Shown piece after piece: positions 43,334 to 45,403 of a stretch of DNA of 64,000 bases. The stretch's first letter is position 1. Each line of letters starts with the position of its first letter. The stretch covers positions 1,721,950 to 1,785,949 of the forward strand of contig NW_003314295.1 of NCBI RefSeq assembly GCF_000143415.4, given 5' to 3'. This DNA comes from Selaginella moellendorffii (Eukaryota > Plantae > Lycopodiophyta). Position numbers and translations under genes: made by a program. The notes under the pieces were generated by a model, which saw only the letters and a list, made by a program, of their open reading frames with translations, was not told the origin of the DNA and ran no database searches.

Positions 43334-45403
43334 ATGAGTTCAGGCATAGTGATTGTTCTTCTCGTTTTTTGCTTCATCTGCTCTTTCTCGAATGCAAAAG
43401 AGGAGTCATCTGTGCTTTTGAGCTTCAAAAACTCTGTGGACGATCCATCTAAAACTCTGTCCAGCTGGAATACAAGTGTTAACTTCTGCCAGCACTGGAA
43501 CGGCATAGCCTGCACGGCGAAAGGCCGAGTTTCCATTCTTGCACTTGAGAATTTAGCACTTCCAGGGTCGCTCTTGGTTTCCACAATCAACTCTTTGCCC
43601 TTCTTACTCGAGCTATCTGTCTTGGGAAGCAACTTCACTGATGCTTTGAATTCCTCCAAACAAGCCTGCTCACTTGAGTTGATCAAACTGTCGGGTAATC
43701 AAAACATGTCTTTCACGACCAATTTTGATGCTATGCTAGTCTGCAAAGGTCTAAAGATTCTCAATCTTTCAAACAATCAAATTGAGGGTAAGATTCAGGT
43801 GCCAATAGGCAGCGTTTTGGAAGTAATGGATCTCTCCAACAACTTATTTAGTGGGGAGCTTCCCCACTTACTGTTTTCACAGTGCAAGAGATTGAGATAT
43901 CTAGACCTCTCCCACAATCATCTCACCGGAGAACTTCCAGAGGATCTTTTTAAAAATTGTACTAATCTGCAGCAAATCTCTCTGGCCTCCAACAGCTTCC
44001 GTGGCACATCATTTCCCTCTATTCACTCCTTGCCATCGCTAGAATTTCTCGACGCTAGCTTCAACAACTTCACAGGTCCGGTTCCTGCAATTCATGAGAA
44101 CCTCAAGCATCTTAATCTTAGCTCAAACAATTTCAGCACAACCAGGGAAACCTTATGTCCATCGCTCAACTCCTCGAGGCTGGAGAGCTTGATCCTGGTC
44201 AACAACAAGCTCACCGGAAGGGTATTGGACAGCGTCATGAATTGCTCTAGCCTTAGGATGTTGGATTTGAGCTTCAATTCGTTAACAGGAGAGATTCCAA
44301 GCAGCATATGCAAACAACTTCCCAAGCTCGAGCACTTTCTCGCGTGGGTAAACAACCTCCAGGGGCAGCTTCCCCAAAACCTTGCATCGTGCAGTAACCT
44401 CACCGAGATCATCCTCACTTTCAACAATCTCAGTGGAAACATTCCACCTGAGCTGTTGTCCAGCACAAAGAGCCTCCAATGGTTATGCTTGAGTAATAAC
44501 AGATTGAGTGGAGAGTTGCCTGATTCATTGGAGCATGCAAAGGAGATGATAGTGCTTCAGCTGAGCAACAACAGCCTGCAGGGCAAACTGCCCAGCAACA
44601 TGACCATGCAGACGATAGATCTCCGTGGAAACAGCTTGAGCGGGAGGATTTCAGCCTCTTTGAATGGTTTCACAGGCACCAAATCTGCCAAATCCAACGT
44701 TGCTGGGACGAGCTTGAAGCTAGCAACAGGGATAAAAACATGTGGTTGCATCGACAACATTTTTATCTTACAAGGAATCTCTTTGGAAGAAATGGAGAGG
44801 CTACTTTCTGCCAAGAGCGGTGGCTGCAAATGCTCCATAAGTTTCCTTCCAGCAAGCTTTTATGGTTTCTCCACCACCAGCCCTTCCTTCATCGATGTTT
44901 CATTCAATAGACTGGTGGGAGACATCCCGCGGGAGCTTGGGAGCATGCAGGACGCCAATTACCTCAGTGTTGCACATAACTTCCTGTCCGGAACAATCCC
45001 CGTGGAGCTCGGGTATCTCAAGAAAGTGATAGGGATGGACTTGTCATTCAATGATCTCCAAGGAAGCATTCCAAGCTCGTTTTCGTCTCTCCAGTCCCTC
45101 ACAGGGTTGAATGTGTCGCATAACAACTTGTCCGGTCCAATTCCACAGGGTGGTCAGCTTTGGACACTTGATCCGAGCAGCTATGCAGGAAATGCCGGTC
45201 TGTGTGGTTTCCCTCTAGCGTCATGCATCACATCACCACCAACAGCGACGAATCGTGCTGACCATGGCGATGGCGATGGTGGATTGGGAGCAGTTCTTGC
45301 GGTGAGCTTTGCAATTGGGGTGCTGGTCTCGGTTATCTCCTGTACAATGGTAGTCACCATTGATAGTAGGAAACGCTTTGTGGAGAGAGCTTGCTATGGA
45401 TGA
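43334..45403 (+). CDS. LRR receptor-like protein: signal peptide, LRRs, island domain, 4 LRRs, TM, short tail, no kinase; ectodomain resembles BRI1/BRL2
   Basis: Single ORF with N-cap CQHWNGIAC, plant LRRs (LxxLxLSxNxLxGxIP), a non-LRR insert at about 44660-44885, C-cap [42 protein letters not shown] and a 13-aa tail. Confidence 0.93.
   Translation: [689 protein letters not shown]

What the first reader, a model, noticed from the sequence alone, without database searches (positions are those of the whole stretch)
43334..45403. Kinase-less receptor-like protein with a BRI1/BRL2-type island domain: candidate stand-alone steroid-sensing ectodomain
Seen: LRR array, a ~75-aa non-LRR insert (about 44660-44885), four more LRRs, TM and a 13-aa tail. 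No kinase motifs (GxGGFG, HRD, DFG) appear before the next gene. From recalled Arabidopsis sequences the match goes beyond generic LRRs: [13 protein letters not shown] vs BRL2 [22 protein letters not shown] vs AVLQLGNNN; island [19 protein letters not shown]...[21 protein letters not shown]...C vs BRL2 LGRQPGSKALSGLLSGNTM...CKGVGGLVEFSGIRPERL...C and BRI1 CHGAGNLLEFQGIRSEQLNRL...C; [28 protein letters not shown] vs BRL2 [28 protein letters not shown]. Established: the BRI1 island plus adjacent LRRs forms the brassinosteroid pocket, and lycophytes are generally regarded as lacking canonical BRI1 although they contain brassinosteroids. Inference: either a split receptor (RLP ectodomain signalling through a SERK/SOBIR-type kinase) or a relic of the module from which BRI1 was assembled.
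Basis: partly seen in the sequence, partly recalled or inferred. Interest (0 to 1): 0.88.

Follow-up and report, generated by a model that had tools for sequence, protein, structure and literature searches.

The report
Kinase-less BRI1-like receptor in Selaginella
This spikemoss gene is a real, expressed cell-surface protein whose outer part is related to the plant steroid-hormone receptor BRI1, but it has no kinase and lacks the residues BRI1 needs to hold the steroid, so it is probably a receptor or regulator for another signal.

Summary
Window 43334-45403 (+) is an intronless 689-aa ORF: signal peptide, 17 LRRs, a 73-aa island, 4 LRRs, a membrane helix and a 13-aa tail. No kinase lies anywhere in the 64 kb. 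The window is Selaginella moellendorffii scaffold GL377599.1.

Spliced transcriptome contigs from four studies cover the gene unspliced and cross the stop codon. The ectodomain is BRI1/BRL-like by sequence, fold and tree. It belongs to a clade of at least 8 kinase-less Selaginella paralogues. That clade is sister to seed-plant BRI1/BRL and separate from classical LRR-RLPs.

Only the island core (Cys...QGI...Cys) is homologous, and Pfam's Island model does not match. The steroid-pocket residues are missing: Trp564 is Thr, Gly613 Asp, Gly644 Pro, Tyr597/599 Leu, and the NGSM motif is absent.

The closest paralogue pair gives dN/dS 0.25. The other haplotype carries a 14-bp frameshift null allele.

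Verdict: a lineage-specific BRL-derived receptor-like protein, unlikely to be a canonical steroid sensor. PSKR1 was compared only through solved structures. PSY1R, EMS1, NILR1 and fern or moss BRLs were not compared. BRL-like RLPs were noted by Ngou et al. 2024. This scan reached the same view for two paralogues on other pieces of this genome.

The parts
43267..43333 (+). 5' untranslated leader; transcript start near 43267-43315
   Evidence: RNA contigs begin at 43267 (X1), 43310 (X2) and 43315 (X4). Bins 43036-43219 are empty in all four runs.
43334..45403 (+). Intronless CDS of a 689-aa kinase-less LRR receptor-like protein, stop included
   Evidence: ORF list, Pfam, colinear RNA contigs. 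The sequence is 100% identical to S. moellendorffii GL377599.1.
43334..43396 (+). Signal peptide (aa 1-21)
   Evidence: Hydrophobic N-terminal helix in the model. The cleavage site after the Ser-Asn-Ala tripeptide is inferred.
43397..43516 (+). LRRNT_2 N-terminal cap (aa 22-61)
   Evidence: PF08263 matches aa 23-61, E 2.2e-10.
43517..44662 (+). 17 plant-type LRRs (aa 62-443); about 4 fewer than BRI1
   Evidence: LRR parse. Query aa 136-638 aligns to BRL3 249-763.
44663..44881 (+). 73-aa island domain (aa 444-516). The core, from Cys470/472 through QGI (480-482) to Cys498/500, is homologous to the BRI1 island core
   Evidence: Island-only profile hits only BRI1, BRL2 and BRL1 in the PDB. hhalign gives 82%, E 1e-5, score 30.7, against 9.4+-1.9 for shuffled columns. 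PF20141 does not match. Model confidence is low to moderate.
44882..45169 (+). Four C-terminal LRRs (the C3 region), with a QxxT loop (GQLWT) in the last repeat
   Evidence: The role of the QxxT/S loop in SERK docking is from PMC10834447.
45170..45286 (+). C-terminal Cys cap (aa 613-632) and mildly acidic outer juxtamembrane stretch (aa 633-651)
45287..45361 (+). Transmembrane helix (aa 652-676). It has no GxxxG motif, only GxxxAxxxA
   Evidence: Model helix 652-687; motif count.
45362..45403 (+). 13-aa cytoplasmic tail and TGA stop (45401-45403)
   Evidence: Paralogue P0001 has the same C-terminal 8 residues (tail 12 of 13 identical) and the same stop position. RNA contigs cross the stop colinearly (records 4, 10, 17, 21).
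45404..45917 (+). 3' untranslated region, converging on the 3' end of the minus-strand OPA3-like gene
   Evidence: Contigs X1 45276-45751, X4 44906-45917 and X3 45315-46115. The neighbour is called OPA3.
44499..44512 (+). Site of a 14-bp deletion in the other haplotype's allele. It causes a frameshift and a stop after aa 391, before the island
   Evidence: RNA contig in run X2 has 14 bases left out at 44498 (table 4). Simulating the deletion reproduces the C-terminus of XP_024535936.1 / P0003 exactly.

Best explanation
The gene encodes an expressed, intronless, kinase-less LRR receptor-like protein. It belongs to a Selaginella-specific family of at least 8 loci.

Shown:
- The family's ectodomain is sister to seed-plant BRI1/BRL.
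- The protein keeps the BRI1-type architecture of 17+4 LRRs around a roughly 70-aa island.
- It keeps the island scaffold: two conserved Cys 26-28 residues apart and the QGI helix.
- It keeps the QxxT loop that BRI1, PSKR and RLP receptors use to dock SERK co-receptors.
- It lacks the residues that line the brassinosteroid pocket.

Inferred:
- The family arose from a BRL-type receptor kinase that lost its kinase before the family expanded.
- The protein binds a non-brassinosteroid ligand in the groove between the island and the inner LRR face. It then recruits a SERK and needs a partner kinase for output. Alternatively it acts as a kinase-less modulator that titrates ligand or co-receptor.
- Three features resemble fast-evolving surface-receptor families more than a conserved hormone receptor: several paralogues, hypervariable island flanks, and a segregating null allele.

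My odds:
- real expressed BRL-clade RLP: 0.9
- not a canonical brassinosteroid receptor: 0.75
- works by ligand-induced SERK recruitment: about 0.5
For: Gene and transcript:
- The ORF has no kinase.
- The runs are RNA, because the neighbouring gene's 8 introns are removed. They cover 43267-45917 unspliced and cross the stop.

BRI1/BRL affinity:
- phmmer gives 1e-108 to 1e-100 through the island. PSKR1 and RXEG1 align only after the island.
- The top 22 Foldseek hits are all BRI1/BRL.
- The C-terminal module model aligns to BRI1 423-771 with Z 41.9 and 2.0 A over 338/345 residues. RXEG1 gives Z 32.6 (302 aligned) and PSKR1 Z 31.3 (305 aligned).

Island core homology.

Tree:
- The Selaginella clade (99/96) is sister to BRI1/BRL (99/99). 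The joint clade has 99/98 support, and classical RLPs are separate.
- The AU test rejects Selaginella plus classical RLPs as one clade, p = 0.023.
- The result holds without the island columns.

Pocket and motifs:
- Pocket residues are replaced (their roles are from PMC13481262).
- The QxxT loop is present.

Family and selection:
- All family members are kinase-less with 5-20 aa tails.
- dN/dS is 0.245 against P0001, with the same stop position.
Against: - No ligand, partner or phenotype is known.
- The TM lacks the GxxxG motif that classical RLPs use for SOBIR1, and the outer juxtamembrane is only mildly acidic. The adaptor is therefore unknown.
- The island is modelled at pLDDT about 30-78. 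The model was built from an alignment rich in BRI1-family sequences, so the structural match is partly circular.
- The BR pocket is structurally plastic and tolerates many substitutions (PMC13481262). Missing residues do not prove that no steroid binds.
- A null allele in the reference plant shows that one copy can be lost without killing the plant.
- PSY1R, EMS1, NILR1 and fern or moss BRLs were not in any comparison. PSKR1 was compared only through solved structures and was not in the trees.
Confidence: 0.7

Rival explanations
1. Split steroid receptor. The ectodomain still binds a brassinosteroid, perhaps a Selaginella-specific one, and signals through SERK plus a separate kinase. This would supply the BR perception that Selaginella shows without a BRI1 kinase.
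For: - Selaginella responds to BR and to a BR biosynthesis inhibitor but has no BRI1 kinase (PMC3862569).
- The ectodomain is sister to BRI1/BRL, with the same island position, length and scaffold.
- The QxxT loop is kept.
- The gene is expressed.
- The pocket tolerates many changes (PMC13481262).
Against: - Trp564 is W in 26/26 seed-plant sequences and essential, but is T, T, V, M, M, V, L, M in the eight paralogues.
- Gly613, Gly644, Tyr597/599 and Lys601 are replaced and the NGSM motif is gone; Tyr642 is replaced in 7 of the 8 paralogues, including this one.
- PF20141 does not match.
- The ligand-contacting island flanks differ in sequence and length among paralogues.
- A null allele is tolerated.
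Confidence: 0.08
2. Dispensable relic. It is a truncated BRL remnant drifting toward pseudogene status, transcribed but without a role.
For: - The other haplotype carries a 14-bp frameshift that removes the island, TM and tail. That transcript is also present.
- The locus lies in a region rich in decaying gene-fragment copies (scan note s1-368710).
- The paralogue copy is a bare CDS-sized duplicate.
Against: - dN/dS is 0.245 overall and 0.16-0.36 in the ectodomain and membrane segments (0.46 in the signal-peptide/N-terminal cap segment), at dS 0.27. Reading frame, stop and tail are conserved between paralogues.
- Intact ORFs with the same architecture are retained in at least 8 loci down to 38% identity.
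- Expression was seen in runs from at least 4 studies.
Confidence: 0.12
3. Pre-fusion ancestor. The family never had a kinase and represents the free island-plus-4-LRR module from which BRI1/BRL kinases were later assembled.
For: - The clade is sister to seed-plant BRI1/BRL, not nested inside it.
Against: - Kinase-bearing BRLs are reported in ferns and in some mosses such as Sphagnum (PMC9223546). The vascular-plant ancestor therefore probably already had the kinase, and loss in the Selaginella line is more parsimonious.
- The islands lack the Yx8KG and Kx5Y motifs typical of RLP islands.
Confidence: 0.08

Closest known systems
BRI1/BRL1/BRL2/BRL3 brassinosteroid receptor kinases (LRR-RLK subfamily Xb)
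   Same: - LRRNT cap and LRR superhelix.
- A roughly 70-aa island exactly four LRRs before the membrane.
- An island core with two Cys 26-28 residues apart and the G-I pair.
- A QxxT loop in the last LRR.
- It is the best match by sequence, fold and tree.
   Different: - No kinase (13-aa tail).
- 21 LRRs, not 25.
- Pfam Island does not match.
- Pocket residues Trp564, Tyr597, Tyr599, Lys601, Gly613, Tyr642, Gly644 and the NGSM motif are not kept.
- It forms a separate, Selaginella-only, multi-copy sister clade.
BRL-like LRR-RLPs noted by Ngou et al. 2024 (PMC10834447)
   Same: Kinase-less proteins whose ectodomains fall with BRI1/BRL. Their function is unknown.
   Different: Those are described as highly similar to BRL1/BRL3 and as retaining the BR-binding residues. 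This family is old (38-48% identity among its own members), lacks those residues, and sits in a lineage reported to have no BRL kinase.
Classical immune LRR-RLPs (Cf-9/9DC, EIX1/2, RLP7/23, RXEG1)
   Same: The same domain order: signal peptide, LRRs, island, 4 LRRs, juxtamembrane stretch, TM and short tail. They are multi-copy and divergent, and have the QxxT/S loop.
   Different: - This protein falls outside their clade (99/98 support; AU p = 0.023).
- Its island is about 25-30 residues longer, and alignments need 27-33 gaps.
- It has no Yx8KG or Kx5Y motif and no GxxxG in the TM.
- Its tail is shorter.
PSKR1 (LRR-RLK Xb, peptide receptor with island)
   Same: An island four LRRs before the membrane, and use of a SERK co-receptor.
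   Different: - Sequence alignment covers only the LRRs after the island.
- The island profile does not hit PSKR1.
- The structural Z is 31 with 305 aligned residues, against 42 with 338 for BRI1.

Membership tests
BRI1/BRL receptor kinases | LRR ectodomain with a roughly 70-aa island four LRRs before the membrane | tested here: met
   The island is aa 444-516, followed by 4 LRRs. Its length matches BRL: 5-16 gaps over about 210 aligned positions.
BRI1/BRL receptor kinases | Island recognised by the curated island model (Pfam PF20141) | tested here: not met
   There is no match at E<=10 for the island segment or for any of 7 Selaginella proteins. AtBRL3 scores 5.6e-32 in the same scan.
BRI1/BRL receptor kinases | Island homologous to the BRI1 island at profile level | tested here: met
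   Only the core is homologous. hhalign gives 82%, E 1e-5, 39 aligned columns, score 30.7 against a maximum of 17.1 in 200 column shuffles. The island-only profile hits only BRI1 (E 0.002), BRL2 and BRL1 in the whole PDB.
BRI1/BRL receptor kinases | Cytoplasmic Ser/Thr kinase domain | tested here: not met
   The tail is 13 aa. Pfam finds no kinase and tblastn finds none in the 64 kb. The RNA is colinear across the stop.
BRI1/BRL receptor kinases | Conserved brassinosteroid-pocket residues (Trp564, Tyr597/599, Lys601, Leu615, Tyr642, Gly644, Met657/Phe658) | tested here: not met
   Substitutions in this protein: W564 to T, Y597 to L, Y599 to L, K601 to T, G613 to D, Y642 to F, G644 to P, M657 to S. 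L615 to I and F658 (kept as F) are conservative.
BRI1/BRL receptor kinases | Falls inside the BRI1/BRL clade | tested here: inconclusive
   It is sister to the seed-plant clade, not nested in it. Fern and moss BRLs, PSKR1 and the remaining Xb members (PSY1R, EMS1, NILR1) were not available for the trees.
BRI1/BRL receptor kinases | Binds brassinosteroid | not testable with these tools
   This needs purified ectodomain and binding kinetics.
LRR receptor-like proteins (island + 4 LRR type) | Signal peptide, LRRs, island, 4 LRRs, TM, short tail, no kinase | tested here: met
LRR receptor-like proteins (island + 4 LRR type) | GxxxG motif in the TM and strongly acidic outer juxtamembrane (SOBIR1 and BAK1 coupling) | tested here: not met
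   This protein has 0 GxxxG motifs, against 1-3 in each of the 9 classical RLPs whose TM segment was found. Its juxtamembrane has 3 D/E and 1 K/R, against 5-12 D/E in the RLPs.
LRR receptor-like proteins (island + 4 LRR type) | Yx8KG or Kx5Y motif in the island | tested here: not met
   Neither motif occurs in any of the 8 Selaginella islands.
LRR receptor-like proteins (island + 4 LRR type) | QxxT/S loop in the last LRR | tested here: met
   GQLWT is present. The motif definition is from PMC10834447.
LRR receptor-like proteins (island + 4 LRR type) | Groups with classical RLPs in a tree | tested here: not met
   The classical RLP clade is separate (99/98). The AU test rejects a joint clade at p = 0.023.

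The most novel reading that the evidence does not exclude
The Selaginella kinase-less BRL-clade proteins are the missing steroid sensors of lycophytes. They would be a split receptor in which a stand-alone island ectodomain binds a lineage-specific brassinosteroid and signals through SERK and a separate kinase. Alternatively, they preserve the free ectodomain module from which BRI1 was built.
Probability: 0.07. Interest if true: 0.85.

Novelty: new member of a known kind. Interest (0 to 1): 0.4.

Why it matters
Papers on brassinosteroid evolution state that Selaginella has no BRI1 homologue, because their searches required a kinase. This locus and its paralogues show that BRI1/BRL-type ectodomains do exist there, as an expressed kinase-less family. 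That gives concrete candidates for two open questions: how a lycophyte that responds to brassinosteroids perceives them, and how the BRI1 ectodomain and kinase came together or apart. The sequence evidence argues that this protein is not a classical steroid sensor. The practical value is therefore a corrected gene inventory and a small set of testable proteins, not a new mechanism.

Tried and rejected
- The Pfam Island model gave no match. This does not disprove homology, since profile-profile comparison recovers the core.
- The exhaustive representative search with a family profile was swamped by giant multi-LRR fusion proteins. Only the few-stretch hits were useful, and all were Selaginella kinase-less proteins except one angiosperm kinase.
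- The region-restricted homologue search over island plus C3 was ranked by repeated LRR hits. It was useful only as a source of RLP and gymnosperm sequences.
- The protein-atlas features for island plus C3 pointed to generic RLP and EMS1-like clusters. I treated this as a lead only, and the tree contradicts an RLP placement.
- The candidate outgroups P0115 and P0105 proved to be XI/XII-type kinases, not Xb.
- P0266 has no comparable island; its QGI lies inside an LRR. I left it out of the island analyses.
- P0003 has no recorded contig, and She et al. 2011 is not held.
- I considered and rejected three alternatives: a downstream kinase exon, an assembly artefact (RNA crosses the stop), and RNA derived from the 89%-identical paralogue (contigs with 0-3 differences).
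- No PSY1R, EMS1, NILR1, fern or moss BRL sequence, and no storable PSKR sequence for the trees, could be obtained with the tools.
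Full report
**What is there.** Window 43334-45403 (+) holds an uninterrupted 689-aa ORF. Pfam finds an LRRNT_2 cap and LRR families only. 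Parsing gives the following layout:
- signal peptide, aa 1-21
- cap, aa 22-61
- 17 LRRs, aa 62-443
- 73-aa non-LRR island, aa 444-516 (nt 44663-44881)
- four LRRs, aa 517-612
- Cys cap, aa 613-632
- juxtamembrane stretch, aa 633-651
- membrane helix, aa 652-676
- 13-aa tail, then TGA

tblastn with five full-length BRI1-type kinases against all 64 kb matches only 43322-45391, and the alignments end at about residue 820 of the kinases. No kinase exon is therefore present. The window is Selaginella moellendorffii GCA_000143415.2 scaffold GL377599.1: a fetched locus is 100% identical to window 37340-51403. The deposited gene model (627 aa) splices out pieces that the RNA does not remove.

**Expression and the stop codon.** Twenty public runs hold the stretch. 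I laid four of them, from four studies, on 42300-47800. They are transcriptomes. The minus-strand neighbours (OPA3-like and amine-oxidase genes) show eight introns removed with CT..AC ends in all or most runs. The bins 42300-42851 and 43036-43219 are empty. Contigs cover 43267-45917 without splicing. Four contigs cross the stop colinearly: X1 45276-45751, X2 45276-45611, X3 45315-46115 and X4 44906-45917. Several contigs differ from the window at 0-3 positions, so they come from this locus and not from the 89%-identical paralogue. The transcript is therefore real and kinase-less. Contigs cannot give expression level or exact ends.

**Relation to BRI1.**
- Against all solved structures, the best hits are the BRL3, BRL1, BRI1 and BRL2 ectodomains (1e-108 to 1e-100), each with a single alignment through the island. 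PSKR1 and the RLP RXEG1 align only after the island.
- In 5.8 billion proteins, the closest non-Selaginella proteins are nearly all BRI1/BRL carrying the Pfam Island domain.
- An AlphaFold model (pLDDT 80) finds BRI1/BRL as its top 22 Foldseek matches.
- A model of the last 345 ectodomain residues aligns to BRI1 423-771 with Z 41.9 and 2.0 A over 338/345 residues. RXEG1 gives Z 32.6 (302 aligned) and PSKR1 gives Z 31.3 (305 aligned).
- Two caveats apply to the structural result. The island is modelled at low to moderate confidence, and the input alignment was rich in BRI1-family sequences.

**The island itself.**
- Pfam's Island model (PF20141) does not match this protein or its paralogues even at E<=10, while AtBRL3 scores 5.6e-32.
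- A profile built only from eight Selaginella islands hits, in the whole PDB, only BRI1 (E 0.002), BRL2 (0.04) and BRL1, in register.
- Profile-profile comparison with 26 seed-plant islands gives 82% probability, E 1e-5 and score 30.7. Column-shuffled controls gave 9.4 +- 1.9, with a maximum of 17.1 in 200 trials.
- The aligned part is the core, corresponding to Cys609...Gly620-Ile621...Cys635 of BRI1. The N- and C-terminal island segments carry the ligand contacts in BRI1. They do not align here, and they vary in sequence and length among the paralogues.

**Pocket residues.** I compared 26 seed-plant BRI1/BRL sequences with eight Selaginella proteins.

| BRI1 position | Seed plants (n = 26) | Selaginella paralogues |
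|---|---|---|
| Trp564 | W in 26/26 | T, T, V, M, M, V, L, M |
| Gly613 | G in 26/26 | D, S or E |
| Gly644 | G in 26/26 | P in 7 of 8 |
| Tyr642 | Y in 26/26 | F, L or Y |
| Tyr597 / Tyr599 / Lys601 | Y, F or L / F or Y / R or K | L / L / T in this protein |
| NGSM motif | present in about 20/26 | absent |

Both Cys, Gly620, Ile621 and Ser655 are conserved. PMC13481262 shows that Trp564His lowers brassinolide binding about 100-fold and phenocopies a null. It also shows that Gly644Asp strongly reduces binding, and that Tyr599, Tyr642 and Lys601 position the ligand for SERK binding. The same paper notes that the pocket is plastic. The sequence therefore argues against canonical steroid binding but does not disprove it.

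**Family and evolution.**
- S. moellendorffii has at least 8 loci of this kind: P0001, P0004/5, P0006, P0008/P0127, P0180, P0187/P0249/P0269 and P0266. All lack a kinase, and where a membrane helix could be located the tail after it is 5-20 aa.
- In a tree of the last 345 ectodomain residues, the Selaginella proteins form one clade (99/96). This clade is sister to seed-plant BRI1/BRL, gymnosperms included (99/99). The joint clade has 99/98 support. Classical RLPs (EIX, Cf-9/9DC, RLP7, CuRe1) form a separate clade.
- Forcing Selaginella and classical RLPs together costs 13.6 log-likelihood units (AU p = 0.023).
- The grouping holds without the island columns (98).
- PSKR, PSY1R, EMS1, NILR1 and fern or moss BRLs could not be fetched for the trees, so neither the exact position within subfamily Xb nor the direction of change (kinase loss or never gained) is settled. 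Because ferns and some mosses are reported to have BRL kinases (PMC9223546), a single loss before the Selaginella expansion is the more parsimonious inference.

**Selection and polymorphism.**
- The closest paralogue (P0001, scaffold GL377590.1) shares 89.4% nucleotide identity only over 43303-45431. Its flanks show no synteny.
- dN/dS is 0.245 overall at dS 0.27. By segment: island 0.36; LRR blocks 0.16-0.24; juxtamembrane, TM and tail 0.32; signal peptide and N-terminal cap 0.46. The last 8 residues of the tail and the stop position are identical. Both copies have therefore been under purifying selection as kinase-less proteins.
- The RefSeq protein from the other haplotype (XP_024535936.1, 391 aa, 97% identical) ends exactly as predicted if 14 bp after window 44498 are deleted. 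A transcript contig with that deletion is present in run X2. The reference plant is therefore heterozygous for a null allele that removes the island and the membrane anchor.

**Mechanistic features.**
- The last LRR keeps the QxxT loop (GQLWT) that BRI1, PSKR and RLPs use for SERK docking (PMC10834447).
- SERKs and SOBIR1 are reported across land plants (PMC10834447), and a BAK1 homologue is reported in Selaginella (PMC3862569).
- Unlike nine classical RLPs examined (each with 1-3 GxxxG motifs), this TM has none. The outer juxtamembrane is only mildly acidic.
- The islands lack the RLP-typical Yx8KG and Kx5Y motifs.
- The protein thus looks like a BRL ectodomain on a minimal anchor, not like a classical SOBIR1-coupled RLP. 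Its output partner is unknown.

**What is known.** Papers on BR evolution say Selaginella lacks a BRI1 homologue, or that the island arose in seed plants (PMC3862569, PMC4926431, PMC9223546, PMC10671120, PMC13261678). Those searches required a kinase. Ngou et al. 2024 (PMC10834447) reported LRR-RLPs inside the BRI1/BRL ectodomain clade and left their function open. They describe those RLPs as retaining the BR-binding residues and do not mention Selaginella in the main text. NCBI's automatic names already call these proteins BRI1 or BRI1-like. Two earlier follow-ups of this scan, on paralogues elsewhere in this genome (s1-408288, s1-410723), reached the same reading. My tests on this locus agree with them independently.

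**Verdict.** I class it as a new member of a known kind. Its interest is moderate, because it corrects the gene inventory and offers testable candidates for lycophyte steroid perception.

Noticed in passing
window 44499-44512: The other haplotype's allele (XP_024535936.1, 391 aa) carries a 14-bp deletion here. It causes a frameshift and a stop before the island. The deleted form is also seen in an RNA contig of run X2.
   Followed up: yes
window 43303-45431 versus L001 9971-12092 and L001 8265-8381: The 89%-identical paralogue is a bare CDS-sized copy: 31 bp upstream to 28 bp downstream, with no flank synteny. A further 117-bp fragment of the gene's 5' end (81% identical) lies 1.6 kb upstream of that paralogue. 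This suggests dispersed or retro-type copying, or fragment copying.
   Followed up: partly
window 41814-42488 versus 33869-34611 (inverted): The upstream mRNA cap guanine-N7 methyltransferase fragment gene region has an inverted copy of about 86% identity roughly 8 kb away, with many small gaps. This matches the decaying gene-fragment copies noted earlier in this scan.
   Followed up: partly
window 36000-40000: An AT-rich block (GC 0.26-0.31, against about 0.45-0.55 around it). It contains a direct repeat: 37341-37628 versus 36419-36704, 85% identical.
   Followed up: no
window 45315-46789: One transcriptome contig (X3) runs from the 3' end of this gene into the spliced minus-strand OPA3-like gene. 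The two convergent genes therefore have abutting or overlapping 3' UTRs.
   Followed up: no
window 43960-44134: Run X4 alone shows two low-depth joints inside the CDS: one skips 75 nt with AC..CA ends, the other skips 61 nt with GT..AG ends. These may be a rare mis-spliced isoform or an assembly artefact.
   Followed up: no
window 43340-45403 (L002 6001-8064): The deposited GenBank gene model for this locus gives a 627-aa product that does not equal the straight translation. The intronless 689-aa ORF is the one supported by RNA.
   Followed up: partly
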